The translations under genes were made by a program, and so were the position numbers. Below are positions 20,130 through 43,208 of a stretch of 64,000 nucleotides of DNA, one piece after another (within the stretch, counting starts at the first letter, position 1; every line of letters begins with the position of its first letter). Below the pieces are notes generated by a model that was not told the origin of the DNA, made no database searches, and saw only the letters and a program-made list of their open reading frames with translations. The stretch is from positions 124,001 to 188,000 of the IMG/VR virus record IMGVR_UViG_3300043570_001980; one strand, written 5' to 3'.

Positions 20130-20155
20130 ACAGTATAGTTAAACAAGGAGCCTAA

Positions 20156-29259: not shown

Positions 29260-30347
29260 CAATACCATACGCAAATTTATATAGCGAATACCTAGAAGTA
29301 AAAATTCCAGTTGACCAAGCCATTGAACGTTGTATTACAAACAGTTCATTCATTGGCGGGGAAGAAGTTTTAAAATTTGAAACTGCCTGGAAAGACTACA
29401 CGCAGTCAGAAGATTGTGCCGGAGTAAGCAGTGGCACAAGTGCATTGATGTTGTCTTTGTGGGCCGTGGGAGTTCGTCCCAGCGACGAAGTGCTTGTTCC
29501 AAGTATGAGCTTTGTTGCGTCAGCTGAGTGCGCTAGTCAACTAAATGCTCGTCCTCGTTTTATTGACATTGATCAATACTATACTATGGACCTTGATCAA
29601 ATTGAGTCAAAACTTACAAATAAAACCAAAGCAATTATTGTGGTGGATCTTTATGGTCAAACTGTGGATATAAAGAAGCTCAAGGAGATTGCCAACGGCA
29701 TCCCAATCATACAAGATGCGGCTCAAAGTTCTGGATGCAGGTACCTTGGAAATTCAATTGGCAGCCAGGCAGATTTAACATGTTTTAGTTTTTACCCAGG
29801 AAAAAATTTAAGTGCCATGGGAGATGCAGGTGCAGTTACAGGTCGTCAGGAATTAGTTAAACTTGTTAAAATGCTTAGAGATCACGGAAGAAAAGAAAAA
29901 TACGTACACGAGACTATTGGCTGGAATGAAAGACTAGATTCTATGCAGGCAGCGATTTTATCAGCCAAACTAGATCATTTAGATACCTGGAATCAACGAC
30001 GTATAGAAAATGCATCTGTTTATTACAATATGTTATCTAACTGTGACAAAATACAATTGCCAAAAGTAAACAGTAATGTGAGTACCCACGTTTATAATCA
30101 ATTTGTTATTGCAACAGATTGTAGAAATGAATTAAAAGAATTTCTTTCAAGTCGTGGAATTGAAACTGGTATACAATTTCCACTGGCATTACATAAACAA
30201 CCGGTGTATGCTAGAATGGCAGGTACGGATAGTTTTCCAAATAGTGAACGGCTAGCAGACTCGTGTTTGAGTTTGCCAGTACATGCACAAATTACCACTG
30301 CACAGGCAGAAACTGTGGCCAAAGCTGTAATAGATTTTTTTAACTAA
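29250..30347 (+). CDS. DegT/DnrJ/EryC1/StrS aminotransferase (DesV/FdtB-like)
   Basis: DAAQSSG, FSFYPGKNLSAMGDAG, GWNERLDSMQAAIL. Confidence 0.93.
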   Translation: MSITIPYANLYSEYLEVKIPVDQAIERCITNSSFIGGEEVLKFETAWKDYTQSEDCAGVSSGTSALMLSLWAVGVRPSDEVLVPSMSFVASAECASQLNARPRFIDIDQYYTMDLDQIESKLTNKTKAIIVVDLYGQTVDIKKLKEIANGIPIIQDAAQSSGCRYLGNSIGSQADLTCFSFYPGKNLSAMGDAGAVTGRQELVKLVKMLRDHGRKEKYVHETIGWNERLDSMQAAILSAKLDHLDTWNQRRIENASVYYNMLSNCDKIQLPKVNSNVSTHVYNQFVIATDCRNELKEFLSSRGIETGIQFPLALHKQPVYARMAGTDSFPNSERLADSCLSLPVHAQITTAQAETVAKAVIDFFN

Positions 30348-31971
30348 CGTTGCCGTAACGTTCTGAGAAATAATTTCTTAACCATTGCCAGTTAAAACTA
30401 TTTTTTCTGTATTCATAGTTGTCTTTATATGCTAGATAAAATTCTCGGCCGTCTTTGGCTCCTATCAATGCCCACTCAGCATAGTCGCCGTCAGCAACTG
30501 TTTCCCAAATATTAATTCTATAATCAGTTTCAATTGTTGGAGTTCGAGACTGTATATCATATAATTTACTGACTTCTCTAAATGCAGTTCTCCAGGTGTG
30601 GTATGGACTTGTGTTAAAATTACCATAGGTGCTGATAATTGGCACAACTTCGTGTGGGAAACTCATTGTATAATCTAGTCCAAATTCCTGGCCAATGTTA
30701 TCTAGTATAAGATTACAATTGTACATGATAACAGCCATTTCTCCGTAGACTAATTTGTTTACACGATTCTCGCTGTAAAAGATATAGTGTTTAGGCTGTT
30801 GAAAATAGTCAGGCTGGAATGTAAAATCAAAATCTGGGTGTAACTCTGTCTTGCCAAATACTGCAAAGTACCAGGGTGTTTGACTAGCCTTAGCAGCCTC
30901 GGCCAGAGCATTCTCCATTCCAACCACACCATGCACACGTTTAGCTCGAGGAAATTTTGTTAACAATTTTTCATAGTTTACATCTGCCTCGGGCTCATCG
31001 TAGCTAATAAACACAATATCTTGCAATGCAAGATCATGACTAATCTGAGTTTTATCAATGTACGGATAGTCGTAGACTTGTGTGTTAATTGTAGACAATG
31101 CTGTTCGTGGAATTAATGCACAATCGTTATTTGGGGACAATGTAATAACTGTCTTAGTTAGTTCTCTCCATAGATTAACAGTTGGGTACACCATTGGAGG
31201 ATTTTGAACAGTAAACAATCCTACCGGACCATAAAAAGAGTCAGGATCTAATGCAGTAACTTGTGTGTCGCAGGAATGTTGTATTACTGGTACTGGCCTG
31301 CGTTTAACTTGCAAGTCAACAAAGTTTAAATCATACCACTCGAGTAATTCTTTACCCTTAATTCTTTCAATAAACGTTGGCACATGCATTAAAAATGTAT
31401 CACCAAACTTTTGTTCATTGCTAGGAAATACATGTAACAACTCTTTTTGCCAAGGATCAGGATGCCATGTAAAATCAAAATTAGTATAATCACAGATTGT
31501 AGAGCAAATCCAAATGTATTCAAGATTGTCATTGCTAGCTGTTTTAGCAATGCGTGTTAGAGTGTCAAGATAATTGTCAAAATATCTAACCACTTTTTTA
31601 ATTGTGATTTTTTCCGACAGAGTATTCAATGCTAATTCTAGAGAATTATCCATATGATCTATTAAGTATATATCGCTAGATTGTCTAGTGAGAACAACCA
31701 TGTCTGTATGGTAATTGGTATCCGTGAATCCAGTTTTTGGTACTAGATAAGTACCCGAATCTTTTTGCCACTGACTAGGAAATACATGCTGTTGATTTGC
31801 TTGCCAGGGTGCTGGTTCCCAAAGAAAATTAAACTCAGAATAGCTCGATAAGTAATTTACGACCCAACAATATCGAGTGCGACTTAGTTCGCAGGCCTGC
31901 TCCGTGCTTGTTACTGCACGTTCATGCACAAACAATCCTGGTTTTTTTCCTATATAGAATATATCAAACAT
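30340..31971 (-). CDS. Multi-domain glycosyltransferase-like protein (paralog of 50067)
   Basis: C-terminal DIVFISYDEP...AKRVHGV...WRTAFRE; two internal F-x-W-x-P-x-PWQ...HVFPS repeats. Confidence 0.6.
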   Translation of the reverse strand: MFDIFYIGKKPGLFVHERAVTSTEQACELSRTRYCWVVNYLSSYSEFNFLWEPAPWQANQQHVFPSQWQKDSGTYLVPKTGFTDTNYHTDMVVLTRQSSDIYLIDHMDNSLELALNTLSEKITIKKVVRYFDNYLDTLTRIAKTASNDNLEYIWICSTICDYTNFDFTWHPDPWQKELLHVFPSNEQKFGDTFLMHVPTFIERIKGKELLEWYDLNFVDLQVKRRPVPVIQHSCDTQVTALDPDSFYGPVGLFTVQNPPMVYPTVNLWRELTKTVITLSPNNDCALIPRTALSTINTQVYDYPYIDKTQISHDLALQDIVFISYDEPEADVNYEKLLTKFPRAKRVHGVVGMENALAEAAKASQTPWYFAVFGKTELHPDFDFTFQPDYFQQPKHYIFYSENRVNKLVYGEMAVIMYNCNLILDNIGQEFGLDYTMSFPHEVVPIISTYGNFNTSPYHTWRTAFREVSKLYDIQSRTPTIETDYRINIWETVADGDYAEWALIGAKDGREFYLAYKDNYEYRKNSFNWQWLRNYFSERYGNVS

Positions 31972-33085
31972 GATTAGAATCGACGAAATTTATGGTAATA
32001 CTTTTTGGCCATTTATAAAAAATCAAGTGTCAAATACAAAATTGTACTGTTGTGATCCTCCAGGCAATACCAACCCTGACAGTTTGATTCACTTTGGCGG
32101 TAATAGCATAGATATGATTAATTATATATTCTTTCACGACCAAGAGCCAATTCATTTGGACATATACGCTGATTTATTTGCTGAGGTTTATGATAGAAAT
32201 CCATTGGATAACATTAGTTATGTTGATGCACAGAGGCGCCACGGAATAGTAACCAGTGAGTCTAACAGTGAATCAGTGGAGGAGCTGTGTAAAAAATACA
32301 ATTGGGAATTTTATTATTATTTTTTTCATGGATGGGCCGCGCTGGATTGGTATCGTGGGTACGACAAAACATTCCTGATTTCTCCTGCTAGCAAGCGCAA
32401 GATCACCAAAACATTTATTGCTCCAAATCGTATTATTGCCGGAGAACGTAAACACCGACTTGAAATGTTATATCATATATTTAAAAACCGTATGCTAGAC
32501 AATCATATCAGTTGTCCCGATACTTGTCCTGTAGAAAATATCAGTATACATGAAGCTATCAAACCCCTGGCAGAACGTTATCCTGACATTGAGTCGGTGT
32601 TTTCTCGCACACCTTTACCTATACAATTTGCTGGCGAGACTGATCATCCAATGCATTCGTGTTGGCTAAGCTTATTTGACGAAGCTGCCGAGAGTTTATT
32701 ATATTTGGTTACAGAAACTGTGTACACAGGACGCAGACATCATTTGACTGAAAAAACATTCAAACCCATAGCTCTGAGAATGCCGTTTGTGATTGTGGGT
32801 ACCAAAGGCAGCTTAAAGTACTTACGAAGTTATGGGTTTCGCACATTTGAAGGAATATGGGACGAAAGTTACGACGATTCAGAAGATGAAGATAGGATTA
32901 AGCACATTGCCAACCTATTGCGCAACCTTAACGAATTACCGCTGTCGGGCAAACAGGATCTATTTAATATGGCACAGGAAGTTATAGAGCACAATTGGAA
33001 TCACTTTTATAATGGCGGGTTTGAAGCTGTACTTTGGGCAGAGCTACAAGGAATGTTAGCAAAAATAAAAAAAGACTTTTATTAA
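31970..33085 (+). CDS. Glycosyltransferase-like protein, ET..TEK family
   Basis: LVTET...LTEKTFKPI...PFVIVG...GFRTF...DESYD. Confidence 0.6.
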   Translation: MIRIDEIYGNTFWPFIKNQVSNTKLYCCDPPGNTNPDSLIHFGGNSIDMINYIFFHDQEPIHLDIYADLFAEVYDRNPLDNISYVDAQRRHGIVTSESNSESVEELCKKYNWEFYYYFFHGWAALDWYRGYDKTFLISPASKRKITKTFIAPNRIIAGERKHRLEMLYHIFKNRMLDNHISCPDTCPVENISIHEAIKPLAERYPDIESVFSRTPLPIQFAGETDHPMHSCWLSLFDEAAESLLYLVTETVYTGRRHHLTEKTFKPIALRMPFVIVGTKGSLKYLRSYGFRTFEGIWDESYDDSEDEDRIKHIANLLRNLNELPLSGKQDLFNMAQEVIEHNWNHFYNGGFEAVLWAELQGMLAKIKKDFY

Positions 33086-34245
33086 TGATAAACTTTTGTT
33101 ACGATGAATTGTCTACTCCAAATATTGGATATCCAAATCTAGCAACTCTTAAAGCAGTTCCTTACACACCCAGTTGGAGAAAATTTGATAGCCAATGGCC
33201 TTATACTGTGCCATTGCGTCTTTTATATTATTTTCATTGCTATAAAATTCCTTACAACGTACATCTAGTGTCTAGTGCTCCACAGGGGTCAGTATACCCA
33301 ATATCAATAGGATGGTTTGATTTTCAATGCGATTATTTTTCTTTAATTCCTGTTAATACATTAAAAAAGATAAAAGACAAAGAAATACATGTTTTATTTT
33401 ATTATCACGAAGGCGATAACCCAACTAGAATAACACAAAGACTAGACAACTTGTGTCATCGACATAATATTGATATAAAATGTTACACATTTATAAGTGC
33501 TAATTCAGCGGCTGAAAATTACTTTTCAGACCATGAGTTTTTCTTTCGCTACATCAATAGAGATCAGGTGGCCGTTCCTATAACCACAGAAAAACGTCAG
33601 TATACATTTACTGCACTATGTAGGACTCACAAGTGGTGGAGGGCCACCTGCTTGGCAGACTTAGAACGCAAAGGATTATTAGAAAACAGTTTATGGAGTT
33701 ACAATACAAAATGCGTCATCGATGATAACTTTGATGATAACCCAATTCAAATTGATCACATAGAAATAAGAAATGAACTAGATTTTTTTATTAACAATGG
33801 TCCATATAGTTGTGACGATCAATCAGAAAAAGAACACAATGATCATCACATTGTCAATGCAAGTTTATACACACAATCCTACATACATATTATACTAGAA
33901 ACACATTTTGATGCTGATCAGAGTGGTGGCACATTTTTAACAGAAAAAACATGGAAGGCAATTAAATTTGGTCAGCCTTTTATAATTGTTGGTCCACCAA
34001 ATAGTCTAGCAACTCTTAGAGAACGTGGTTATAAAACCTTTGATCATTGTATTAACAACAAGTATGATAGTATACAGGATAATACTAATCGATGGATGGC
34101 AATTGTTGATACACTAACACAACTCAATTCTAATCCAGAATTGATTTATCAACAATGCATAGAAGATGTCAGACACAACCAGAGATTGTTTTTGTCCACA
34201 GGACATGAAGAGTTAAATAGAATAATAGGAAAATTAAATGTCTAA
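33085..34245 (+). CDS. Glycosyltransferase-like protein, ET..TEK family
   Basis: IILET...FLTEKTWKAI...PFIIVG...GYKTF. Confidence 0.6.
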   Translation: MINFCYDELSTPNIGYPNLATLKAVPYTPSWRKFDSQWPYTVPLRLLYYFHCYKIPYNVHLVSSAPQGSVYPISIGWFDFQCDYFSLIPVNTLKKIKDKEIHVLFYYHEGDNPTRITQRLDNLCHRHNIDIKCYTFISANSAAENYFSDHEFFFRYINRDQVAVPITTEKRQYTFTALCRTHKWWRATCLADLERKGLLENSLWSYNTKCVIDDNFDDNPIQIDHIEIRNELDFFINNGPYSCDDQSEKEHNDHHIVNASLYTQSYIHIILETHFDADQSGGTFLTEKTWKAIKFGQPFIIVGPPNSLATLRERGYKTFDHCINNKYDSIQDNTNRWMAIVDTLTQLNSNPELIYQQCIEDVRHNQRLFLSTGHEELNRIIGKLNV

Positions 34246-35299
34246 TATTATTAATAGTTACACCAGTTGGCAACCACTTGAAGAAGTAATTGTTGGTTGT
34301 GTTTATACGCCAGAATATTTTAACTTTATCCAGGATGAACAAGTTAAAGGTCAAATGACTAAAATACTCGAAGAGTCGGCTGAAGATTTGGATAATCTAC
34401 AAAAAGTAATTGAATCGTACGGAGCAGTAGTTAAGAGGCCAGATCTTCCAAAAATTAAACAATGGCAAAGTTTGCAAATAACAGATCAAGGTGTCCCAAT
34501 CCCACCACTAACACCTAGAGATTGGCAAATTACCCTGGGTGAAAAATTATTAAGAGTATTAAATGTTGCGGAAATGAATACTATATGTCGTGACTACGAA
34601 CAGAAACAACCAGGTAGCATAATTGATCCGCACAATAAAAATTCTGAATCACGCAATAACATATATGACCCTGACCACGTTATGGTAGACGCAGTGGCCA
34701 GTTGTATTGTTCGTGTGGGCACAGATGTATTCTTTGACAACAGCGAGTGGCTAACTGACGGTCAGATGGAATGGATTCGAAATAATGTACTAGATAGTCG
34801 ATATCGAATTCGTAGAGCTGTCACAAATGGGCACGGGGATAGTGTGTTTGCTATATTAAAACCGGGGGTAATATTAAGTACCATGCACGATGGTGATATC
34901 AACTACAAAGAAAATTTTCCCGGATGGGAAGTGTGTAAGATTTGGGACGCAAGTATTTTTGCTGCCATGGAGGTTGGAAAATTTCGTCAAGAAAACTTTA
35001 ATGGACGCTGGTATGTACAAGGTCAGAATCCAACTACTGAGTTTGCTAAGTTTGTTGACACTTATCTGACCAAATGGACTGGGTATGTTAAAGAAACTGT
35101 GTTTGATGTTAACTGTTTGGTGTTAGACGAGCAACATGTTATCTTTAGTTCTTACAACAAGATGGTTTTTGATTTTTGCAAAAAACATAACATTGAACCA
35201 ATAATTTCAGAGTTACGACACAAGTATTTCTTTGACGGGGGCATCAGTTGTTGCACTCAGGATATTCGTCGTCGAGGCGGATTAGAAACTTATCTATAA
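34238..35299 (+). CDS. Amidinotransferase family protein (StrB1/glycine amidinotransferase-like)
   Basis: NSYTSWQPLEEVIVG, PRD, HGD, FDVN, GGISCCTQDIRR. Confidence 0.82.
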   Translation: MSNIINSYTSWQPLEEVIVGCVYTPEYFNFIQDEQVKGQMTKILEESAEDLDNLQKVIESYGAVVKRPDLPKIKQWQSLQITDQGVPIPPLTPRDWQITLGEKLLRVLNVAEMNTICRDYEQKQPGSIIDPHNKNSESRNNIYDPDHVMVDAVASCIVRVGTDVFFDNSEWLTDGQMEWIRNNVLDSRYRIRRAVTNGHGDSVFAILKPGVILSTMHDGDINYKENFPGWEVCKIWDASIFAAMEVGKFRQENFNGRWYVQGQNPTTEFAKFVDTYLTKWTGYVKETVFDVNCLVLDEQHVIFSSYNKMVFDFCKKHNIEPIISELRHKYFFDGGISCCTQDIRRRGGLETYL

Positions 35300-35300
35300 A

Positions 35301-36539
35301 TTACAACAACTCAAAATGCTTGGCTTTGCTCCACCAATTAAAAGGTGAAAACATTCTTGTTAGTTCCCAGGCACCAACATCGGGTTGGCTGGCCCAAAAA
35401 CGTGTTAGTTCTTTAGTGTTTATTCTGCGTTCAAGGTCCTGATAATACTGCCAATGCTCAGTGTCGTTGCGTTGAGTCAATGTGTAATTGGTCAATACAA
35501 AATCATATAACTGCTTGGTTAGATTCAATGTTGCTTTGTTGTAGACTTTTGGATCTCGGCCAGTGTTGACAAATCTTGCAAACGCTTCAAGATAGTATTG
35601 CACAAGATATATGCTGGTTGCTTCCAATGGTTCCATAAATCCCGATGACAGCCCGACTGCCAGCACATTCTTTTCTAAAGGGTTATGTGAATACATGCTG
35701 TCATACTTGATAACTCGCAGTTTGTCCACATTTGTGTTAGGAAAATATGTTAAGTATTCAGCACGAGCTTGTTCGTCTGTGATAAACTGACTGCTGTAAG
35801 TATAACCACAACCTCTTCTATGAGCTAGCCCTGTGTCCCAGAGCCAGCCAGCTTTGCCTGCATAGGTAATTGTATACTGCGGTTGTGGGCCTGGATCAAG
35901 TTGTTGTGGACAAACCACAGCACGATCATTGAGTATGTCTCCATACTTGCTGAATTTAATTCCAACTTTATCTGCAAAAAGTCTAGCAGGACCTGAACAG
36001 TCAATATAAAAGTCTGCGCTTAATGTTTGCCCGTTGTCTAATAGCAAACCGCTGACATACCCATTTTCGTGTTGTTTGATATCAACAATGTGCGCTTGTA
36101 GATATTTTACTCCGGCTGGGTCAGCGACTCTGCGCTTTAGCATTTGTCCAAACGCTATTGCATCAATATGATAAGCATACTTGCCTTCTTTGACTGGCGG
36201 CAATATTCCCGACTCTAAATAATATTGTCCATTACAATTATTACGATCATAGCAGAAGAAGTGTTTCCATACAGTATCTTTTTCTCTAAGCCAATTGTAA
36301 TGGAAGATCCCTATTTTATGTCTGGCATTTGCTTCAGGCATCCATTCCTCTTCTTTTAATCCAAGAGAATCACAGAAAATACCGATTGCAGGCAAACAAC
36401 TTTCACCTACACCAATGGTAGGAACATCAGGACTTTCAACTAATGTTACATCAAATCCTTGCTTAACCATATAGCATGCACTCATCCAGCCAGCTGTACC
36501 ACCGCCTACAACCACAATGGATTTGATTTGATTGTTCAT
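35301..36539 (-). CDS. Flavin-dependent halogenase family protein (tryptophan halogenase-like)
   Basis: GGGTAGW, IGVGES, DCSG, GWLWDTG (variant of WxWxIP), GFMEPLEATSI. Confidence 0.85.
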   Translation of the reverse strand: MNNQIKSIVVVGGGTAGWMSACYMVKQGFDVTLVESPDVPTIGVGESCLPAIGIFCDSLGLKEEEWMPEANARHKIGIFHYNWLREKDTVWKHFFCYDRNNCNGQYYLESGILPPVKEGKYAYHIDAIAFGQMLKRRVADPAGVKYLQAHIVDIKQHENGYVSGLLLDNGQTLSADFYIDCSGPARLFADKVGIKFSKYGDILNDRAVVCPQQLDPGPQPQYTITYAGKAGWLWDTGLAHRRGCGYTYSSQFITDEQARAEYLTYFPNTNVDKLRVIKYDSMYSHNPLEKNVLAVGLSSGFMEPLEATSIYLVQYYLEAFARFVNTGRDPKVYNKATLNLTKQLYDFVLTNYTLTQRNDTEHWQYYQDLERRINTKELTRFWASQPDVGAWELTRMFSPFNWWSKAKHFELL

Positions 36540-37786
36540 GTTTGTTCTGCAGGAATCAGTTCATAACCATTTAACATTGCCCACCAACTGCATGGGAAAA
36601 ATAAATTGGTTGAATTCCATTGTTCGACATCTTTTTCTGCCGCTTTTTGTTTGACATAGTTCAGCGTGTTGATCTTTTTCTCAAGATCATTGTAATATCT
36701 CCAGTACTCAGTGTCGGTTCTGCCCGACAATGTATAATGACAAAGAACAAATTTTGCTGTGTGATCAAATACTTTTTTCTGGGATCTGTTAATAGCCCCA
36801 GCAGGACGTTCCCCTGATGCAAACATTTCTGATTGTACAATCATATACTGAGTTAAAAATATACTAGTAGCTTCTAATGGTTCAATAAATCCGCCAGCAA
36901 GTCCAACACAGATAACATTTTGATTTATAGGATTTAAACAAACTTCAGGTACAAATTTTAAAAAATTAATTTTGCTCTTATCGGTTCCTGGATAATGTTC
37001 ACAATATTCTTCAACGGCCTGCTCATCAGATATGTGTTTACTTGAATAAACATAACCACAGCCTCGTCTTGTGGTCAACGGTATTTCCCAAATCCATCCA
37101 GCTGATTTAGCAATTGTTGTTGTATATCTATTAATAGTAGGTAGACTTGGCTGTGCTGTTGTAACTGCACGATCGTTGAGCAAATGTTCGTAACGATGAT
37201 ATTCCATGCCAACTTTGCTTGCTAATAATTTGCGCCAACCAGTACAATCAATGTATAAATCAGCAGACAATTCAAGGCCAGTGCTGGTTATTAATTTTTC
37301 TATCCCTGATTCAGGGTTTCCAATAACATCAGTCACGTGACCAACAATGTGTTTACATCCGTGCTTGAGTGCAGTTGTTTTAGCAATAGTGTCGCCAAAT
37401 TTAAATGCATCAACATGATATCCGTATTCTAATTTTTCACGAGGGGGTAATGTGTTATTTTTTAAGTGCTCAAATTGTTCTTCATGTGTTGTACGATCAT
37501 AGATAAACCAATGCCACCAGTTTGAGTCTCGATTGTTCCAGCCTTCGTGCTTGATTGCCATTTTAAAAACTGAATCACTAAGTGGCATCCATTCTTCTTC
37601 TTCCATGCCTAAAAAATTTGCAAACCAGTTCATAGCAGGTAACGTGCTTTCTCCTACCCCTACTACATTAACGTCGGGACTTTCTATCAGCGTAACTGGG
37701 TATCCTTTTTTACTATAATATCCAGCGGCCATCCAGCCAGCTGTGCCGCCCCCAACTACTAAAATTGATTTATTTTGATTGTTCAT
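36536..37786 (-). CDS. Flavin-dependent halogenase family protein (tryptophan halogenase-like)
   Basis: GGGTAGW, VGVGEST, FKMAIK, GWIWEIPL, GFIEPLEATSI. Confidence 0.9.
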   Translation of the reverse strand: MNNQNKSILVVGGGTAGWMAAGYYSKKGYPVTLIESPDVNVVGVGESTLPAMNWFANFLGMEEEEWMPLSDSVFKMAIKHEGWNNRDSNWWHWFIYDRTTHEEQFEHLKNNTLPPREKLEYGYHVDAFKFGDTIAKTTALKHGCKHIVGHVTDVIGNPESGIEKLITSTGLELSADLYIDCTGWRKLLASKVGMEYHRYEHLLNDRAVTTAQPSLPTINRYTTTIAKSAGWIWEIPLTTRRGCGYVYSSKHISDEQAVEEYCEHYPGTDKSKINFLKFVPEVCLNPINQNVICVGLAGGFIEPLEATSIFLTQYMIVQSEMFASGERPAGAINRSQKKVFDHTAKFVLCHYTLSGRTDTEYWRYYNDLEKKINTLNYVKQKAAEKDVEQWNSTNLFFPCSWWAMLNGYELIPAEQT

Positions 37787-39260
37787 ATGTTTCATTTAGC
37801 AAGTACCTTTGTATTTTTCCATTGGTATTTTTGGGTAATTCCTTGGTTACACGAATGTACCTAGGGCACTTAAAATAATCCAATTTGTGTTTTATCAACG
37901 ATTTTAATTGGTGATCAAAATTTTCTGGGATTTCTACATCGGGTGCTAGTACAATGTATGCAACGATTTCTGTTAACCCATCACTGTTCTCAATACCCGA
38001 CACACCAGCTTCAAATACCAATTCGTGCGATATTAATAAATTTTCTATTTCTACTGGGCTGACCCAGTTGGCATTCACTTTTAGCATATCTTTAGAACGC
38101 CCAACAAACTGATATGTATCACCTTGTTGTATAAATTTGTCTCCTGTTTTACACCATTTACCTATAAAAGTTTCCTGGGACTTTTTGGTTTCATTTTGAT
38201 ATCTAAGAGCCATCGACGGACCATCAATATACAATTCTCCCACTTGATTTTGTACAACACAATCATTGGCATCTTTTACCATTCCTGAAAATCCTGGTAA
38301 TAATTTTCCTGACACAATAACCGGTGCTAGTAATTCGGTACTACCGTACCCGTCAACGATAGGTAATTTTGTTAACTCCTGCCATCGTTGTTGCATGGTA
38401 GATGTTATTGCCTCACCAGCACTTACGCACAATCTTAAAGACCCATAGTTAATTGGTAAATTTTCATTTAACAATCCAACATAAAAAGACGGAACTGATC
38501 CAAATAACGTGGGTTTGTGTTTTTTAAATATCCTTGCCGCAGTACTAGGAGTATGTAATTTACCATGCAATATTGTTGTGGCTCCCACAGTCAATGGAGA
38601 TATAAATGCACTACTTATTCCCCAACTAAAAAACAATTTTGATGTGGCAAAAACAATATCGTCGGACTTATAACCTACATCGATCCCGTAGCCTAACCCT
38701 ACACCAATCATTGATCTATGAGAATGTACAACTGATTTAGATTCTCCTGTACTGCCCGAGGTAAACAACCAAAATGCTTCGCCGTCTCTTAGAGTTGTTG
38801 GGGGATCAAAACTTGATGGAGTACTCAATATATTTAGTTGTTCAATAGATAACACATGCTTGGGCTTGTGTGTAGTTTCAGCAAGGTAACTGTCAATGGA
38901 TTGATTTTGTGTTGTTCTATTATTTGCAAAAATAATAACTTTTGCGGCGCTGGATTCAATAAAGTGACAAATAGTTTTTTTAGGCGACCACGGATTTCCG
39001 ATAACCGGAACAAATCCTCCTAATATACAGCCTAGTATTGCAATGCCGCATTCGATAGTGTCCGGCATTAATATTAACACACGATCTTCTCTTGTTAACC
39101 CCATGTCTGTGAGACTTTTAGCAAATCCCCGAGATCTATGCTCAAGCATTTCATAACTAATCGAGCTGGTATCATCAATTAATGCAATCTTATTTCCTAA
39201 TTTTTTTCCAAAAATGTGTTTGGCAAAATTAAATTTAACAGGTATATCTGTTAACTGCAT
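37770..39260 (-). CDS. Benzoate/aryl-CoA ligase family adenylating enzyme
   Basis: FWLFTSGSTGESKSVVH, SKLFFSWG, SAGE, DGYGSTE, TGDK, LPKNTNGKIQR. Confidence 0.88.
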   Translation of the reverse strand: MQLTDIPVKFNFAKHIFGKKLGNKIALIDDTSSISYEMLEHRSRGFAKSLTDMGLTREDRVLILMPDTIECGIAILGCILGGFVPVIGNPWSPKKTICHFIESSAAKVIIFANNRTTQNQSIDSYLAETTHKPKHVLSIEQLNILSTPSSFDPPTTLRDGEAFWLFTSGSTGESKSVVHSHRSMIGVGLGYGIDVGYKSDDIVFATSKLFFSWGISSAFISPLTVGATTILHGKLHTPSTAARIFKKHKPTLFGSVPSFYVGLLNENLPINYGSLRLCVSAGEAITSTMQQRWQELTKLPIVDGYGSTELLAPVIVSGKLLPGFSGMVKDANDCVVQNQVGELYIDGPSMALRYQNETKKSQETFIGKWCKTGDKFIQQGDTYQFVGRSKDMLKVNANWVSPVEIENLLISHELVFEAGVSGIENSDGLTEIVAYIVLAPDVEIPENFDHQLKSLIKHKLDYFKCPRYIRVTKELPKNTNGKIQRYLLNETYEQSK

Positions 39261-40747
39261 ACAGTTACTCCATATAATTTTTCAAATCTATCAGCATCGA
39301 CTCTATCATTAACCATGGGCTCTCCACGTATGTTTAAGCTGGTGTTTAACAGCATTGGGCAACCAGTCATCACGTACCACTTTGCCAACAATTGTCTAAT
39401 TCCCGATCCATCATTCGGAACTGTCTGAACACGACTAGTGCCATCAACGTGAACGATAGCAGGAAATATGTGAGGATGCCTGCAACGAGCGATGACTTGC
39501 ATATACCTACTGTCACTGAAGCCACGAGGCATATCAAAATACATATCAACATGCTCCTCCAGAATGACTGGCGCAAATGGTCTGAATTTTTGTCTGCGTT
39601 TGATTTCATTTACACGATCCTTTATTTCTGATCCTCTTGGGTCGGCCAATAAACTGCGGTTGCCCAGTGCTCTAGGACCAAACTCTGCTCTACCGCTAGC
39701 CACTCCAACAATTTGATTTTTAAGTAGCTCATCAAGTATACTGTTAACTGGATACGGTCCAGGAATGTCATGCCCAAGAAAAGCACTAGTCCAATTAACT
39801 CTGTGACCGTATGCCAAAGCGGCAGCGCCAAGACTGCTGCCTGCGTCGCCAGGATTAGGCATAATCCAAATATTATTAAAATAGTTTCCAAGATGTCTAT
39901 TTGCAAGGCAATTTAATGCCACGCCTCCCATGTATACAAGATTATCGCTCCAATTTAAAGACTTGGCACGTTTCATTACATTGACAATTAATTCTTCTAC
40001 TAGCTGTTGTGCTGATGCGGCAATGTCTTCATTGGTGGCAGCTTCTAAGTAAGTTGCATCTAATCCAGTGTGAAGATTATCTTTAAACTTGATAGTATCA
40101 AGATCTTCAATAAGACCCTGATTCATTTTTTCATACCACGAGGATTTCCCCCATCCCGACATGCCCATGGTAATGTATTCTTCGTCCATTGGGTGTAGTC
40201 CAATACGTTTAGTTATTGCACTATAAAACAACCCTATACTATGAGGATACCGTTGGCTCCACAACTTTTTATAAGTTGCTCGATGTGTAGAATCGTACAT
40301 TGCTCCCCAGATACTAATAGTATCCCATTCACCTATTGCGTCTATAACGACAACGGTGGCCTTGGTAAAGGGACTGGTTTGGAATCCTGCGGCAGCATGG
40401 GACAAATGATGTCCAGCATGTAAAAATAATGGCTCTTTATGAAAAGATACAGGTACATGTTTATGCAAATACTTACGAACAGTAATATCGGTAAAATCCA
40501 ACGCTTCATTATATTGTCCTGCGTAAAAGTTTCTTAGCTTTTTAAGCCAAGGTTTTTCGTAAAAAGCAACAACGTCTGGCTCGCCATACGATAATGCCTC
40601 TGCTACCAAGTCTTGATTGATATGAGGATCATGCTTGCTTTTACTGTAGCGTTCGGCGTGGCCGGCAAATAAAATATCGCCTTGATTAGCAATTACCGAT
40701 ACGGCAGCGTCATGAAAACCAGCACTTATACCTAGGTATTTTTTCAT
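39251..40747 (-). CDS. O-carbamoyltransferase (NodU/CmcH/TobZ family)
   Basis: HDAA, HHLSHA, GGVALN, EFGPRALGNRS, RPFAP, LNTSLN. Confidence 0.95.
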   Translation of the reverse strand: MKKYLGISAGFHDAAVSVIANQGDILFAGHAERYSKSKHDPHINQDLVAEALSYGEPDVVAFYEKPWLKKLRNFYAGQYNEALDFTDITVRKYLHKHVPVSFHKEPLFLHAGHHLSHAAAGFQTSPFTKATVVVIDAIGEWDTISIWGAMYDSTHRATYKKLWSQRYPHSIGLFYSAITKRIGLHPMDEEYITMGMSGWGKSSWYEKMNQGLIEDLDTIKFKDNLHTGLDATYLEAATNEDIAASAQQLVEELIVNVMKRAKSLNWSDNLVYMGGVALNCLANRHLGNYFNNIWIMPNPGDAGSSLGAAALAYGHRVNWTSAFLGHDIPGPYPVNSILDELLKNQIVGVASGRAEFGPRALGNRSLLADPRGSEIKDRVNEIKRRQKFRPFAPVILEEHVDMYFDMPRGFSDSRYMQVIARCRHPHIFPAIVHVDGTSRVQTVPNDGSGIRQLLAKWYVMTGCPMLLNTSLNIRGEPMVNDRVDADRFEKLYGVTVCS

Positions 40748-40845
40748 TTGTAGATAAATGGATCTCGTTTACGTAACTCTTTGAGTTTTTTTCTATATCT
40801 TATTTCAAGTTTAATTCTATTGATTAAGTTTTTTAACCAGTTCAT
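40744..40845 (-). CDS. Small basic peptide (33 aa, not in the ORF track)
   Basis: MNWLKNLINRIKLEIRYRKKLKELRKRDPFIYK; ATGA overlap with the carbamoyltransferase start. Confidence 0.7.
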   Translation of the reverse strand: MNWLKNLINRIKLEIRYRKKLKELRKRDPFIYK

Positions 40846-40846
40846 A

Positions 40847-41935
40847 TTAGTTCTTTCGATTGATTATGTTTATCTGACGGTCTATAAAGTCTGAGTCTGA
40901 CCAATGATAGTCGTATATAGCACAACTACTGCTGGTACTCACGCTGTATACATCTAGACTATTATTTAATTGATTCCAAACGGTCAGGTAATCTTCTGTG
41001 TTAAAACTACGTTTTAAATCTACTTGTCCCACTTGAGGATGCCCAATGGTTAATAGTTTATCATTAGGGTCAAACCCATTGACTATTAACCATTCTTTAA
41101 ATTCAGCTAGTTTAATTTGTTGCCAGCTGTGATTACCTGGATTATTTGCCCACTCAATATCAAAATCTCCAGCGGCTTCAGTCTGACTGCGCATAGAGGT
41201 AGTGACTAATTCACTAACTCGACTGTCACGGCCTTCGTCCATGAATACTTCCCAATGATGTTTTCCAATTGCCTTGTTAACTCCAACAAACACTCCTCCA
41301 AGACTGCGGTTTATTGTTTCAATACCAAATAAATCATAGTCATTTTCGTCAAGAGTAAATCTTGGCGCATTTAACCAACACATTAGTTGGCTGGGTCGTT
41401 GCCACTCAGGTGCTTCTATTTCTTTACGATAACTCAATGCCCATGTTTCAAACTCATGACAGAGTAAATTTAATTGTCTTATATGCCAGCGTATGTCAGC
41501 ACTGGCGTGATTAAAATAAACCGACATGCTACCGCTTACGCCCTGAAGGTCTTCAAAATAACGATGCAACCAATTCAAGCGTTCATGAATCATATTCCTA
41601 CCAACTGTTCTTGATCCTACAGGATCATCAGTGATAGTGTTTTCCATTGTAAAATAATCATCAATGGTATATCCAATATTTGCTTGATTAATTGCATTTA
41701 TTGATTTGTTTACCTGTTCAAGAATGTACCACCCATTGCGCTGACTTTGAGTAAATCCTAAAAAACAAAAATTTTTTTCTAAATGAGAGTCATTTGTTAA
41801 CAAACCGTTTAATGCATTTAACCATTTACGAGATAATGAACTATCATAGACGTCAATATAAACTGAGTGAAGATTATCTGTATTTCTATTTTTAAGTTCA
41901 ATTTTAATCTGTTCTAATATTTTTCCACCAGCCAT
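40847..41935 (-). CDS. Hypothetical protein
   Basis: 362-aa ORF in a tightly coupled operon. Confidence 0.75.
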   Translation of the reverse strand: MAGGKILEQIKIELKNRNTDNLHSVYIDVYDSSLSRKWLNALNGLLTNDSHLEKNFCFLGFTQSQRNGWYILEQVNKSINAINQANIGYTIDDYFTMENTITDDPVGSRTVGRNMIHERLNWLHRYFEDLQGVSGSMSVYFNHASADIRWHIRQLNLLCHEFETWALSYRKEIEAPEWQRPSQLMCWLNAPRFTLDENDYDLFGIETINRSLGGVFVGVNKAIGKHHWEVFMDEGRDSRVSELVTTSMRSQTEAAGDFDIEWANNPGNHSWQQIKLAEFKEWLIVNGFDPNDKLLTIGHPQVGQVDLKRSFNTEDYLTVWNQLNNSLDVYSVSTSSSCAIYDYHWSDSDFIDRQINIINRKN

Positions 41936-43208
41936 ATATTTTGTTATCCTGTTGTAGTATTTGGTCTAGCCCAAATGTATCATTTCTAATAGATTCCAAT
42001 TGTAACATTCTGAACTTTCCTCTTGCAAGACCTTTTTCCCAGGTGTCGGGCCATTGTTCTGCAAAAGTTGGGCGTGATTTTAGTTGTAGTAACACATCCT
42101 TCAACGCACCTGGAGGTAAGTTAGTTACTAGACGATCTACTGTGCTGTCTAATAACTCACGAGGCAATGCCAATGGACTCATAATGATGTCCGGGCTAAA
42201 ACTAAAAATCACCTTGGCTAATATATCAACCCCAAGCTCATTTGATAACTGCTGTATATTACCAACTTCAAATAGTCCAGGTAATGTGAGAGTAAAATCA
42301 ATTCGCATTTGCCTGCGATGTTTTTGTATCTCAATTCCCTGTTTAAAGTTTTTTAGAAAGGTGGAATATTCAAGCCCTGTGCGGATGTATTCTCCTGTGG
42401 CTCCTGTTCCGTCGAGGCTGGCACAGATTTGCCAATCGCGAACATTAGATAAAATATCACGATATAGATTAATACCCCGAAAATCAACGCGACTAAGATT
42501 GGTGTTATACCTGGCATATAATTGTCCTCCATCATTTAATTCAATAATACGTTTCATATACCGCCAATGTTGTTCATACATTAGAGGTTCACCGCCTACC
42601 CAATAGACTTCTTCAACTCTGTGTTCTTCTACTGCTTCTGCAAATTCTTTTTCAATTTGCGTGTCCTGGAATTTACTAATTTCTGTTCTTACTGCTGGTT
42701 TCATCCAGTTATTTCTTGGATCCGAATAGTCAATAAGATTGTGTTGACGTTCTTCGCTTTCCCAACTACTAGACAACATATCCCCACACATGCGACATTT
42801 GAAATTGCAAAGATTGCTAAATCTATAATCCCAACTTATTGGTTTCATAGTTGTAGATCCGTTAGGCTGTGTTTTTTCCATGGCCTCTTCATAACGATGT
42901 TTGAATAGGTGCCAGAAATATGTTCGATAGACATCAGTATTTAACAGTTTACTGTTACAAACATCACATTCGGGCAAAATTTCTCCTGCCATCATACGTT
43001 GTCTAACACTTTTCATATGATCGCTATTCCAGTGTTGATCTAGTGTGAGTGGAATATATTTTCCTGTGCCTGCTGATGTGTCAATGTACTGTTGAAAATT
43101 TTGTGCAGGTTCGCGGCTAGCACAACACATTCTGCGTTCGGTTTGAGGACTTAGATAGGTATGCACCCAGGGTGCCATACACAAAGATTCAGGTTTATTC
43201 ATAAGCAA
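41904..43208 (-). CDS. Radical SAM protein with an N-terminal twitch/SPASM-like domain
   Basis: CMAPW..CC..CDVC; CNFKCRMC; GGEP. Confidence 0.9.
   Translation of the reverse strand: MLMNKPESLCMAPWVHTYLSPQTERRMCCASREPAQNFQQYIDTSAGTGKYIPLTLDQHWNSDHMKSVRQRMMAGEILPECDVCNSKLLNTDVYRTYFWHLFKHRYEEAMEKTQPNGSTTMKPISWDYRFSNLCNFKCRMCGDMLSSSWESEERQHNLIDYSDPRNNWMKPAVRTEISKFQDTQIEKEFAEAVEEHRVEEVYWVGGEPLMYEQHWRYMKRIIELNDGGQLYARYNTNLSRVDFRGINLYRDILSNVRDWQICASLDGTGATGEYIRTGLEYSTFLKNFKQGIEIQKHRRQMRIDFTLTLPGLFEVGNIQQLSNELGVDILAKVIFSFSPDIIMSPLALPRELLDSTVDRLVTNLPPGALKDVLLQLKSRPTFAEQWPDTWEKGLARGKFRMLQLESIRNDTFGLDQILQQDNKIYGWWKNIRTD

What the first reader, a model, noticed from the sequence alone, without database searches (positions are those of the whole stretch)
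34238..40845. Natural-product-like tailoring module: amidinotransferase, tandem halogenases, aryl-CoA ligase, carbamoyltransferase
Seen: two adjacent short (~415 aa) halogenase paralogs, one with canonical WxWxIP and one with WLWDTG, coupled to a benzoate-CoA-ligase-like enzyme and a NodU/TobZ enzyme; a convergent amidinotransferase. Established: these families decorate aminoglycosides and other glycosylated antibiotics, and a viral flavin-dependent halogenase (VirX1) is known. Inference: synthesis of a halogenated aroyl group plus carbamoyl/amidino groups for a glycan or small molecule. No flavin reductase, carrier protein or acyltransferase is evident; the SGNH-like proteins are candidate transferases.
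Basis: partly seen in the sequence, partly recalled or inferred. Interest (0 to 1): 0.75.

Follow-up and report, generated by a model that had tools for sequence, protein, structure and literature searches.

The report
Phage halogenase–aryl ligase sugar-tailoring island
A 342-kb lake-water jumbo phage carries a conserved aryl-acid ligase plus halogenase gene pair, inside a 25-kb island for making and decorating an unusual amino sugar, so it probably builds a halogenated, acylated sugar conjugate whose product and target are unknown.

Summary
All five genes exist at the stated coordinates, intact and tightly packed.

**New evidence**
- The ligase–halogenase adjacency recurs in three further phage lineages (ligase 72–95% identical). 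One has no carbamoyltransferase or radical SAM gene nearby.
- These halogenase-linked ligases form their own subfamily. Three of BadA's six benzoate-pocket residues are changed (Y228W, H333A, I334P) and a 10-residue loop is deleted.
- The two halogenases belong to different, deeply separated viral clades. They are not a recent duplication. The nearest relative (about 95%) lacks exactly the second one.
- The surrounding island encodes a desosamine-like route: a 4,6-dehydratase, a DesI-like aminotransferase, a DesII-family radical SAM enzyme and a second aminotransferase. It also encodes a GT-A-fold glycosyltransferase and five N-terminal-twitch radical SAM paralogs.

**Corrections and gaps**
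- The "SGNH-like transferase" idea is not supported.
- The genome has no flavin reductase, carrier protein, lipid-carrier priming transferase or flippase.

**Verdict**
- Most likely the island tailors a deoxyamino-sugar conjugate with a halogenated aroyl group plus carbamoyl and amidino groups.
- Substrate, product and acceptor are inferred, not shown.
- Iyer et al. (2021) predicted a similar halogenase–carbamoyltransferase cluster in cyanophages, so this is a new variant of a known kind.

The parts
24920..25870 (+). TauE/SafE-family membrane protein (anion transporter-like) at the edge of the island
   Evidence: Pfam TauE 1.8e-13
25882..26850 (+). NDP-hexose 4,6-dehydratase/epimerase (SDR family)
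   Evidence: Pfam Epimerase 1.5e-44. The best NCBIfam match is dTDP-glucose 4,6-dehydratase at 7e-34, below the equivalog cutoff. Conserved in L017 (99%), L104 (76%) and L013 (49%).
26774..27880 (+). DegT/DnrJ/EryC1 sugar aminotransferase 1 (DesI/PseC-like)
   Evidence: Pfam 1.5e-57; NCBIfam PseC 1.3e-40 and DesI 5.5e-18, both below cutoffs
27877..29259 (+). Radical SAM enzyme of the DesII family (dTDP-4-amino-4,6-dideoxyglucose ammonia-lyase-like)
   Evidence: TIGR04426 2.6e-101, 339.7 bits against a cutoff of 450, matched over 420 residues
29229..30347 (+). DegT-family sugar aminotransferase 2
   Evidence: Pfam 2.8e-98; NCBIfam PseC 8.3e-62 and LegC 2e-52, below cutoffs
30340..31971 (-). GT-A-fold glycosyltransferase candidate (543 aa); a paralog lies at 50067-50993
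   Evidence: AF2 model pLDDT 70, C-terminal domain about 80. Foldseek against PDB: Mimivirus R699 1.8e-6, LH3, K4CP, SunS, ppGalNAcT and PBCV-1 A64R. Homologs lie next to halogenases in L013, L106 and L007.
31970..34245 (+). Two paralogous viral proteins of unknown function (371 and 403 aa). Their shared C-terminal domain is also present in 46967-48118 and in four other genome sites. There is a weak lead to a GT10-like glycosyltransferase.
   Evidence: Paralogy shown by tblastn. Atlas: nearest clusters are all viral and unnamed; Glyco_transf_10 appears only at 0.80. No Pfam hit even at E=5.
34238..35299 (+). Amidinotransferase-superfamily protein. It overlaps the upstream gene by 8 nt and converges on Hal1.
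   Evidence: PDB phmmer: AGAT 1e-12, SxtG, StrB1, HsvA. Cys338 aligns with AGAT Cys407. His in GHGD and Cys in SCCT are invariant in the family and in the paralogs; the Asp254 equivalent is unclear. The family has 1551 clusters, and the top 120 are 67-100% identical.
35301..36539 (-). Hal1: short flavin-dependent halogenase of the ligase-linked clade
   Evidence: Pfam 1.3e-91. The clade has 100/100 support and contains every ligase-adjacent halogenase. Lys75 and FMEPLEAT are conserved; the clade-specific motif is GW[LIF]W[ND][TV][AG]L.
36536..37795 (-). Hal2: short flavin-dependent halogenase of a different viral clade, occupying a variable slot
   Evidence: Pfam 3.8e-92. It falls in a separate clade with 100/100 support. 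It is absent from L017, where the indel runs from window 37729 to 36540 between the homologous 5' ends of the two halogenase genes. It is present in four independent runs.
37770..39260 (-). Aryl-acid adenylating ligase (benzoate-CoA ligase family, halogenase-linked subfamily)
   Evidence: TIGR02262 372.6 bits; 2v7b 5e-87, aligned end to end. The subfamily signature is FFSWGISS plus a 10-aa loop deletion. BadA pocket residues Y228/H333/I334 become W/A/P (with PMC7277991).
39251..40747 (-). NodU/TobZ-type carbamoyltransferase
   Evidence: Carbam_trans_N 4.5e-36 and Carbam_trans_C 6.8e-48; phrog_1601 1.2e-94. Conserved next to the ligase in L017 (86%) and L104 (69%).
40847..41935 (-). Conserved protein of unknown function and unmatched fold
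   Evidence: 341 representative clusters. AF2 model pLDDT 94. No PDB match by Foldseek; only uncharacterised AFDB clusters. Invariant H124, N156, H160 and K225; near-invariant E128 and E163. Syntenic in L017, L013 and L104.
41904..49508 (-). Five radical SAM genes with an N-terminal twitch domain (41904-43208, 43195-44400, 44397-45746, 45643-47127, 48093-49508), plus one GT10-like-domain paralog (46967-48118)
   Evidence: NF033640 scores 284-395 bits against a cutoff of 170 for all five. Eight such genes exist in the genome.

Best explanation
The five genes are part of a roughly 25-kb phage island (about 24.9-51 kb of the window) that makes a deoxyamino sugar and decorates a sugar conjugate.

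**Shown**
- The gene identities and the intact catalytic motifs.
- The conserved ligase-halogenase gene pair.
- The remodelled acyl pocket of the ligase.
- The desosamine-like operon.
- A GT-A-fold glycosyltransferase.
- The absence from the genome of a flavin reductase, a carrier protein, a lipid-carrier priming transferase and a Wzx flippase.

**Inferred**
1. The 4,6-dehydratase, the first aminotransferase, the DesII-type radical SAM enzyme and the second aminotransferase convert a host NDP-hexose into an NDP-3-amino-3,4,6-trideoxyhexose or a close relative.
2. The ligase adenylates an aryl or heteroaryl acid bulkier than benzoate. It then either makes the CoA thioester or passes the acyl group directly to an amine, as ANL-family amide synthetases do.
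3. Hal1, and Hal2 where present, halogenate the electron-rich ring, using FADH2 made by a host reductase, O2 and halide. The catalytic Lys and Glu are conserved. The tryptophan-binding C-terminal module of RebH and PrnA is missing, so free tryptophan is an unlikely substrate and a larger or tethered substrate is more likely. Hal2 is dispensable, because the 95% relative lacks it. It probably adds a second halogen or a different position.
4. The carbamoyltransferase adds a carbamoyl group to a hydroxyl.
5. The amidinotransferase-like enzyme, transcribed separately with glycosyltransferase-like genes, converts an amine to a guanidine or performs a related guanidino-group reaction.
6. Cytoplasmic glycosyltransferases attach the sugar to a soluble acceptor. 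This is most plausibly a virion or other protein, by analogy with the giant-virus enzymes the GT-A model resembles.
For: - **Families and motifs:**
- **Translational coupling:** gene overlaps of 4, 26 and 10 nt.
- **Ligase-Hal1 adjacency:** conserved in L017/L101, L104/L105 and L095, the last in a different neighbourhood.
- **Halogenase clade:** every ligase-adjacent halogenase falls in one clade with 100/100 support.
- **Ligase subfamily:** the halogenase-linked ligases alone carry FFSWGISS and the loop deletion. The 42-47% relatives without a halogenase (L096, L097) keep the bacterial FFAYG motif and the loop.
- **Pocket residues:** H333 and I334 of BadA become A and P, which resembles the engineered H333A/I334A mutant that accepts bulkier acids (PMC7277991).
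- **Sugar pathway and glycosyltransferase:** DesII family at 2.6e-101, flanked by two DegT aminotransferases and a dehydratase. GT-A fold.
- **Association with sugar genes elsewhere:** halogenases lie next to DegT or GT-A homologs in L013 and L106.
- **Recurrence in a distant phage:** L067/L070 carry a carbamoyltransferase, an amidinotransferase-like gene and four N-twitch radical SAM genes around a halogenase.
- **Absent machinery:** no Bac_transf, Glycos_transf_4 or Wzx.
Against: - No biochemical data exist.
- No transcript data exist: no RNA run holds the sequence.
- No acyltransferase or carrier protein links the ligase product to a sugar.
- Outside this lineage the halogenase family sits in varied contexts, including nucleotide-metabolism genes.
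- The ligase occurs only in this lineage among the 90 halogenase loci.
- In L095 the ligase-halogenase pair stands without a carbamoyltransferase, an N-twitch radical SAM gene or a DegT gene within reach. The pair could therefore make a free small molecule.
- A predicted ligase-Hal1 complex gave no answer.
- DesII, the dehydratase and the aminotransferases all score below NCBIfam equivalog cutoffs, so the exact sugar is uncertain.
Confidence: 0.45

Rival explanations
1. The island makes a free, diffusible small molecule. This would be an aminoglycoside- or aminocoumarin-like halogenated glycoside, used against competing microbes or phages, rather than a decoration of a macromolecule.
For: - The enzyme set mirrors antibiotic tailoring: an ANL ligase, a carbamoyltransferase and a halogenase as in aminocoumarins; an amidinotransferase, DegT aminotransferases and a twitch radical SAM enzyme as in aminoglycosides; a DesI/DesII-like route as in macrolide sugars (pathway parallels come from established knowledge).
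- A TauE-like transporter sits at the island edge.
- In L095 the ligase-halogenase pair stands alone.
- Similar speculation has been published.
Against: - No aglycone or core scaffold genes were found: no PKS, NRPS, cyclitol synthase or carrier protein.
- Several glycosyltransferase-like paralogs are spread over the genome. The GT-A model matches protein- and polymer-glycosylating enzymes.
- A lytic jumbo phage has little time to benefit from an exported antibiotic.
Confidence: 0.2
2. The genes are independent auxiliary metabolic genes. The halogenases act on free tryptophan, indoles or other host metabolites as broad-range enzymes like VirX1, and the adjacency to the ligase, the carbamoyltransferase and the sugar genes has no pathway meaning.
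For: - Viral halogenases are very common: at least 572 IMG/VR loci. Their neighbours vary.
- The carbamoyltransferase accompanies them in only 13 of 90 loci.
- VirX1 is a PDB hit at 1e-49.
Against: - The ligase-Hal1 pair is conserved with overlapping reading frames in four lineages, and the ligase subfamily signature occurs only when a halogenase is adjacent.
- The proteins lack the C-terminal substrate module of tryptophan halogenases: 412-419 aa against 511-550 aa, with alignment ending near RebH residue 445.
Confidence: 0.12
3. The module modifies nucleotides or phage DNA, as a base hypermodification, rather than a glycan.
For: - Hal2-clade relatives sit in a phosphoribosyltransferase-halogenase-MazG-like trio near GTP cyclohydrolase I and PTPS (L009, L010, L014).
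- ThyX lies 12 kb away. ThyA and DHFR lie near halogenases in L007 and L013.
- L095 has a PP-loop ATPase directly upstream of the ligase.
Against: - No DNA transglycosylase, hmdU kinase or DNA glycosyltransferase signature was seen in the island.
- The nearest genes form a classical NDP-deoxyaminosugar route.
- Hal1, the ligase-linked enzyme, belongs to a different clade from the nucleotide-context halogenases.
Confidence: 0.08
4. The radical SAM genes, the halogenases and the amidinotransferase-like genes modify a peptide or protein directly, in RiPP-like or virion-protein side-chain chemistry, and the sugar genes are a separate system.
For: - SPASM and twitch radical SAM enzymes are typical peptide maturases, and weak NCBIfam hits to such maturases were seen.
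- Peptide tryptophan halogenases exist (one search lists one).
- An amidinotransferase-like protein was detected in a cyanophage virion proteome (PMC12801897).
- The guanidino-modifying superfamily includes protein-arginine enzymes (established knowledge).
Against: - No precursor-peptide gene is evident. The only gap in the minus-strand block is 99 bp.
- The radical SAM genes belong to one uncharacterised family, NF033640, not to a known maturase family.
- An aryl-acid ligase has no obvious role in this scheme.
Confidence: 0.07

Closest known systems
Jumbo-cyanophage carbamoyltransferase-halogenase cluster predicted by Iyer et al. 2021 (S-SSM6a type; PMC7824862, section 3.4.10)
   Same: It is a phage gene cluster that combines NodU/CmcH-type carbamoyltransferases with a flavin-dependent halogenase and sugar-modifying enzymes. 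It was predicted to give a halogenated, sugar-derived metabolite or a capsule decoration.
   Different: - That cluster uses 2OG-Fe dioxygenases, a HemK-like methylase, cupins and HAD phosphatases.
- This island instead has a benzoate-CoA-ligase-family enzyme coupled to the halogenase, a DesI/DesII-like aminosugar route, five N-twitch radical SAM genes and an amidinotransferase-like gene.
- Cultured cyanophage halogenases are only about 30% identical.
- No cultured phage has a genuine homolog of the ligase.
Tryptophan-type flavin-dependent halogenases (RebH, PrnA, PyrH, Thal) and the viral VirX1
   Same: Same Pfam family. The FAD motif, the catalytic Lys and the EPLE Glu are conserved. Best PDB hits score 1e-59 to 1e-63.
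   Different: - They are about 100-130 residues shorter. An internal segment of about 60 residues and the C-terminal substrate-binding module are missing.
- Hal1 replaces WxWxIP with WLWDTG, which is a clade-wide signature.
- The natural substrate is unknown.
Benzoate-CoA ligases BadA (4eat) and BCL of Paraburkholderia xenovorans (2v7b)
   Same: The alignment runs end to end at about 37% identity, and all ANL core motifs are present.
   Different: - The score falls just below the TIGR02262 cutoff.
- Pocket residues Y228, H333 and I334 become W, A and P, and a 10-residue loop is deleted.
- It sits in a biosynthetic phage island rather than a catabolic operon.
Desosamine pathway of macrolide producers (DesIV, DesI, DesII, DesV)
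   Same: The same order of enzyme types is encoded in one plus-strand operon: a 4,6-dehydratase, a PLP aminotransferase, a DesII-family radical SAM enzyme and a second PLP aminotransferase.
   Different: - All four score below equivalog cutoffs.
- No DesVI-type N,N-dimethyltransferase was seen.
- The sugar nucleotide and the final sugar are not established.
Multi-radical-SAM plus glycine-amidinotransferase modules of Campylobacter phages CP220/CPt10 and the DegT-radical SAM-amidinotransferase genes of cyanophage S-SCSM2R
   Same: These are unexplained phage modules that pair several radical SAM genes with an amidinotransferase-like gene, in one case among glycosyltransferases (PMC2853527 and PMC12801897).
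   Different: - The N-twitch radical SAM family found here was not detected in those phages. Its only cultured-phage hits are weak ones in Vibrio and Ralstonia jumbo phages.
- The closest cultured-phage amidinotransferase-like gene is 34% identical over half its length.

Membership tests
Flavin-dependent (tryptophan-type) halogenase, Pfam PF04820 | Profile match above the curated cutoff | tested here: met
   308 and 310 bits against a cutoff of 21
Flavin-dependent (tryptophan-type) halogenase, Pfam PF04820 | N-terminal GxGxxG FAD-binding motif | tested here: met
   GGGTAG in both proteins
Flavin-dependent (tryptophan-type) halogenase, Pfam PF04820 | Catalytic lysine (PrnA K79) and glutamate (PrnA E346, in the EPLE motif) | tested here: met
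   K78 and E305 of Hal2, and K75 and E303 of Hal1, are invariant in 25- and 18-sequence alignments. Equating them with the PrnA numbering rests on the reporter's own knowledge of PrnA.
Flavin-dependent (tryptophan-type) halogenase, Pfam PF04820 | WxWxIP motif | tested here: inconclusive
   Hal2 has GWIWEIP, so the feature is met. Hal1 has GWLWDTG, so it is not. The Hal1 form is conserved across its clade, so it is a lineage signature rather than decay.
Flavin-dependent (tryptophan-type) halogenase, Pfam PF04820 | C-terminal tryptophan-binding module, as needed for a genuine tryptophan halogenase | tested here: not met
   The proteins are 412-419 aa against 511-550 aa for solved enzymes. The best aligned stretches end near RebH residue 445.
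Flavin-dependent (tryptophan-type) halogenase, Pfam PF04820 | Halogenating activity | not testable with these tools
   Needs an enzyme assay
Benzoate-CoA ligase family (TIGR02262) | Score at or above the curated cutoff | tested here: not met
   372.6 bits against 375.25, so just under
Benzoate-CoA ligase family (TIGR02262) | ANL core motifs (P-loop, GSTE, GD, hinge, C-terminal catalytic Lys) | tested here: met
   TSGSTGESK, GYGSTE, TGDKF, GRSKDMLKV and PKNTNGKIQR are all aligned to 2v7b
Benzoate-CoA ligase family (TIGR02262) | Benzoate pocket residues of BadA (Y228, G327, S328, T329, H333, I334) | tested here: not met
   G, S and T are kept. Y228 becomes W, H333 becomes A and I334 becomes P, and the following 10 residues are deleted. 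The residue list comes from PMC7277991.
NodU/CmcH/TobZ carbamoyltransferase | Both the Carbam_trans_N and Carbam_trans_C domains above their cutoffs | tested here: met
   125.4 bits against 24, and 162.9 bits against 27
NodU/CmcH/TobZ carbamoyltransferase | Equivalog-level identity with NodU | tested here: not met
   139 bits against a cutoff of 1000
Amidinotransferase (AGAT/StrB1 type) | Detectable sequence homology | tested here: met
   AGAT 1.1e-12, SxtG 6e-11 and StrB1 1.7e-10. There is no Pfam or NCBIfam hit.
Amidinotransferase (AGAT/StrB1 type) | Catalytic Cys (AGAT C407) and His (H303) | tested here: met
   C338 aligns with C407. His in GHGD aligns with H303. Both are invariant in the family and in the six paralogs.
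Amidinotransferase (AGAT/StrB1 type) | Third triad residue (AGAT D254) | tested here: inconclusive
   The aligned position is Val. A nearby Asp151 is not conserved in the family. No structure model was made.
DesII (dTDP-4-amino-4,6-dideoxy-D-glucose ammonia-lyase, TIGR04426) | Equivalog cutoff | tested here: not met
   339.7 bits against 450. It is the best hit by far, over 420 residues.
N-terminal-twitch radical SAM (NF033640) | Score above the curated cutoff | tested here: met
   Five genes in the island score 284-395 bits against a cutoff of 170. There are eight in the genome.

The most novel reading that the evidence does not exclude
A bacteriophage autonomously makes a halogenated aroyl-amido deoxysugar, further carbamoylated or amidinated, and attaches it to its own virion or to another macromolecule. 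That would be the first halogenated glycoconjugate attributed to a virus. The natural substrate of the large family of short viral halogenases would then be a sugar-linked or ligase-activated aryl group rather than tryptophan.
Probability: 0.3. Interest if true: 0.85.

Novelty: new variant of a known kind. Interest (0 to 1): 0.62.

Why it matters
- **Open question for viral halogenases.** They are among the most widespread auxiliary genes of aquatic phages: at least 572 IMG/VR loci and more than 6000 protein clusters. Their natural substrates are unknown. The only characterised example was studied on surrogate substrates (reporter's own knowledge; VirX1 literature listed).
- **A concrete handle.** A conserved two-gene cassette pairs one halogenase clade with a specialised aryl-acid ligase. 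The ligase's substrate can be screened directly, and it should point to the halogenase's substrate.
- **Phage glycobiology.** The island suggests that large phages can carry near-complete routes to macrolide-type deoxyamino sugars plus tailoring chemistry. This parallels the autonomous glycosylation systems of giant viruses.
- **Natural experiment.** The presence or absence of Hal2 between 95%-identical phages offers a natural test of mono- versus di-halogenation.
- **Uncharacterised families.** The island also holds the N-twitch radical SAM family, a 362-aa protein with no PDB fold match, and a highly conserved amidinotransferase-like family.

Tried and rejected
- **Promoter and terminator scans of 33000-50500.** Counts were no better than shuffled sequence: 65 against 59.7, and 13 against 11.3. 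Transcription units rest on gene overlaps only.
- **Complex prediction of the ligase with Hal1.** No answer, score 0.00. This is not evidence either way.
- **RNA evidence.** No RNA run holds the sequence.
- **GT10 assignment of the 31970, 33034 and 46967 paralogs.** The Pfam model was not found in the genome, but that control rang nowhere. There is no Pfam hit at E=5. It stays a weak lead.
- **Fold of the 362-aa protein at 40847-41935.** Foldseek against PDB found nothing. VIA-align gave only middling partial matches at Z 7-9, to cyclophilin-like barrels and helical bundles. AFDB hits are uncharacterised.
- **Close DNA relatives among cultured phages.** None.
- **Ligase homologs among cultured phages.** Only 25-28% hits, and the annotated ones are acetyl-CoA synthetase or NRPS genes that look like bacterial DNA within those records.
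- **"SGNH-like transferases".** Rejected for the one flanking protein modelled, which has a GT-A fold.
- **"Recent tandem duplication of halogenases".** Rejected by the tree.
- **My early assumption of a marine origin.** Corrected: the holding runs are lake-water metagenomes.

Full report
**Setting.** The window is bases 124001-188000 of a 341,990-bp virus record, about 95% complete by CheckV. At least 20 lake-water metagenome runs hold the studied stretch almost word for word. It is therefore a recurrent freshwater jumbo phage, and its host is unknown. No cultured phage is close at the DNA level.

**Check of the observation.** ORF calling and profile searches confirm every gene.
- Hal1 is at 35301-36539 (-), 412 aa, Trp_halogenase 1.3e-91.
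- Hal2 is at 36536-37795 (-), 419 aa, 3.8e-92.
- The ANL ligase is at 37770-39260 (-), 496 aa. TIGR02262 (benzoate-CoA ligase family) scores 372.6 bits against a cutoff of 375.25.
- The carbamoyltransferase is at 39251-40747 (-), 498 aa, and has both domains.
- The convergent gene at 34238-35299 (+) has no Pfam or NCBIfam hit. It matches the sequences of solved amidinotransferases: AGAT 1e-12, SxtG, StrB1 and HsvA.
- The four minus-strand genes overlap by 4, 26 and 10 nt.
- Contigs from four independent runs cover the region, and contigs from three of them bridge ligase-Hal2-Hal1 without a single difference. No joint skips Hal2.

**The halogenases.**
- Both keep the FAD motif, the lysine and the EPLE glutamate. 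These are invariant across the family.
- Their best solved relatives are tryptophan halogenases at 1e-59 to 1e-63, and VirX1 at 1e-49. The phage proteins are 100-130 residues shorter, and the alignments stop near RebH residue 445. The substrate-binding C-terminal module is therefore absent.
- The family is huge: more than 6000 clusters at E below 1e-10 and at least 572 IMG/VR loci.
- A maximum-likelihood tree of 93 sequences places Hal1 and Hal2 in two different clades, each with 100/100 support. They are 44% identical.
- Hal1's WLWDTG is the signature of its whole clade. Hal2's clade keeps WxWxIP.

I fetched about 100 loci and searched them with the island's proteins.
- The nearest relative is L017/L101 (345 kb and 262 kb records, proteins 78-100% identical). 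It is collinear but has a single halogenase, the Hal1 ortholog, directly after the ligase.
- At the DNA level, the missing piece is window 37729-36540. Its boundaries lie in the homologous 5' ends of the two halogenase genes. This is the footprint of recombination between tandem copies.
- L104/L105 (ligase 81%, carbamoyltransferase 69%) has two tandem halogenases, both from the Hal1 clade. It also has a convergent amidinotransferase gene (64%), the N-twitch radical SAM genes and the 362-aa unknown.
- L095 (ligase 72%, Hal1 84%) keeps only the overlapping ligase-halogenase pair. Its neighbours are unrelated: a phosphoesterase, a MazG-like gene, a subtilase and a PP-loop ATPase.
- Ligase relatives at 42-47% identity (L096, L097) have no halogenase.
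- The ligase-Hal1 pair is therefore a conserved cassette, and the slot for a second halogenase is plastic.
- The carbamoyltransferase is linked within this lineage and in L013 and L067/L070, but in only 13 of 90 halogenase loci overall.

**The ligase.**
- It aligns end to end with benzoate-CoA ligases (2v7b at 5e-87), and all ANL core motifs are present.
- Its nearest homologs form a separate clade of 493-503 aa. Below that clade, identity drops to about 37% for bacterial enzymes.
- The halogenase-linked members alone share FFSWGISS, where bacteria have FFAYGLGN, and a 10-residue deletion after the GSTE motif.
- Mapped on BadA, the pocket residues Y228, H333 and I334 become W, A and P. Those residues define the small benzoate cavity, and the engineered H333A/I334A mutant accepts bulkier acids (PMC7277991).
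- I infer a substrate larger than, or different from, benzoate.

**Carbamoyltransferase and amidinotransferase-like protein.**
- The carbamoyltransferase is a standard two-domain NodU/TobZ-type enzyme of a known phage family, phrog_1601.
- The amidinotransferase-like protein keeps the Cys and His of the AGAT triad. The Asp equivalent is unclear.
- It overlaps the upstream plus-strand gene by 8 nt, so it belongs to a different transcription unit from the halogenases.
- Its family is very abundant and unusually conserved: 1551 clusters, and the 120 best are 67-100% identical.
- The genome carries six further paralogs.

**The wider island.**
- Upstream on the plus strand lies an operon with a dTDP-glucose-4,6-dehydratase-like enzyme, a DegT aminotransferase, a DesII-family radical SAM enzyme (TIGR04426, 2.6e-101) and a second DegT aminotransferase. 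This is the enzyme order of the desosamine pathway up to the 3-amino-3,4,6-trideoxy sugar.
- The 543-aa protein at 30340-31971 models as GT-A domains. It matches Mimivirus R699, LH3, chondroitin polymerase, SunS, ppGalNAc transferases and PBCV-1 A64R. Its homologs sit next to halogenases in L013, L106 and L007.
- Upstream of the carbamoyltransferase on the minus strand lie a conserved 362-aa protein and five radical SAM genes. The 362-aa protein has a confident model and no PDB match. The five radical SAM genes belong to the N-terminal-twitch family NF033640, which has eight members in the genome.
- The genome lacks a flavin reductase, a PP-binding carrier, Bac_transf and Glycos_transf_4 priming enzymes, and a Wzx flippase.
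- That pattern fits cytoplasmic glycosylation of a soluble acceptor better than lipid-linked surface polysaccharide synthesis. The phage could still borrow host functions.

**Mechanism proposed, as inference.** A host NDP-hexose is converted to a deoxyamino sugar. The ligase activates a bulky aryl or heteroaryl acid. Hal1, and optionally Hal2, halogenates that ring using host-reduced flavin. The acyl group ends up on an amine of the sugar conjugate. The carbamoyltransferase and the amidinotransferase-like enzyme add further groups, and GT-A enzymes transfer the sugar to its acceptor. The order of steps, the acceptor and the missing acyl-transfer step are unknown. If no separate transferase exists, the ligase itself may act as an amide synthetase.

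**Comparison with what is known.**
- Sullivan et al. (2010) listed prnA and carbamoyltransferase genes in the same cyanomyophage genomes.
- Iyer et al. [quoted passage not shown]
- Campylobacter phages carry unexplained modules of five radical SAM genes plus a glycine amidinotransferase.
- Cyanophage S-SCSM2R has DegT, radical SAM and amidinotransferase genes among glycosyltransferases, and an amidinotransferase-like protein in its virion proteome.
- The general idea is therefore not new.
- New here are the conserved ligase-halogenase cassette with a remodelled ligase pocket, the desosamine-like route, the N-twitch radical SAM array and the Hal2 presence/absence polymorphism.

**Verdict.** This is a new variant of a known kind. 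Its interest lies mainly in making the natural substrate of viral halogenases experimentally approachable.

Noticed in passing
window 41904-49508; also genome 14322-15560, 302119-303231 and 303260-304312: The genome has eight radical SAM genes of the uncharacterised N-terminal-twitch family NF033640. Five stand in tandem. None of the 14 control genomes reaches the family cutoff. N-twitch radical SAM genes lie within 10 kb of a viral halogenase in about 22 of 90 loci.
   Followed up: partly
genome 41465-42556, 339613-340749, 216588-217865, 215177-216166 and 335607-336554 (outside the window), plus window 34238-35299: The genome has about six amidinotransferase-like genes, all keeping the Cys and His. 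The window's copy belongs to a family in which more than 100 clusters are 67-88% identical. That is far more conserved than its neighbours.
   Followed up: partly
window 40847-41935: A conserved 362-aa protein gave a very confident AF2 model (pLDDT 94) with no Foldseek match in PDB. H124, N156, H160 and K225 are invariant, and E128 and E163 nearly so, which suggests a metal or catalytic site. It is syntenic with the carbamoyltransferase in L013, L017 and L104.
   Followed up: partly
L009 9492-11625, L010 2964-5097 and L014 890-3074: Hal2-clade halogenases sit in a conserved trio of phosphoribosyltransferase, halogenase and MazG-like PRA-PH. In L009 and L010 the trio lies near PTPS, and in L009 also near GTP cyclohydrolase I and a B12-radical SAM gene. 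This hints at a nucleotide or pterin/deazapurine context for that clade.
   Followed up: no
window 37729-36540 against L017 10001-10066: The one-gene indel (Hal2) between 95%-related phages is bounded by the homologous 5' ends of the two halogenase genes. This points to unequal recombination between tandem copies.
   Followed up: yes
window 39334-39727: The C-terminal conserved part of the carbamoyltransferase gene attracts many short, divergent contigs in all four lake runs, with summed word depth of up to about 59 in a bin against a 5-9 background. Many related carbamoyltransferase-bearing genomes are therefore present in the same lakes.
   Followed up: no
window 56532-63824 and 54275-55705: A 2430-aa ORF has weak FG-GAP and CBM_5_12 hits. 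A 476-aa protein has a Peptidase_G2-like C-terminus, with two paralogous C-termini elsewhere in the genome. They are probably fibre or spike proteins, lying directly beside the sugar island, and are candidate acceptors.
   Followed up: no
window 31970-34245, 46967-48118 and 202-1011; genome 8415-8813, 275519-275890 and 332771-333748: This paralog family of viral proteins shares a C-terminal domain. In other viruses the domain is fused to epimerase or methyltransferase domains (Atlas structure rows). Only a weak lead points to GT10 fucosyltransferases.
   Followed up: partly
L013 5791-6411: In a related jumbo-phage contig, an APS-kinase gene lies next to the carbamoyltransferase. Sulfation may be another decoration in that lineage. 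The window has a TauE-like anion transporter at 24920-25870.
   Followed up: no
window 6361-7140, 14400-15476, 18363-21448 and 22705-23376: Other cargo genes include a D-Ala-D-Ala carboxypeptidase (Peptidase_S11), a TctC-like solute-binding protein, a MoxR-type AAA ATPase with a DUF2201/VWA partner, and ThyX. The DUF2201/VWA gene is conserved near halogenases in 14 loci.
   Followed up: no
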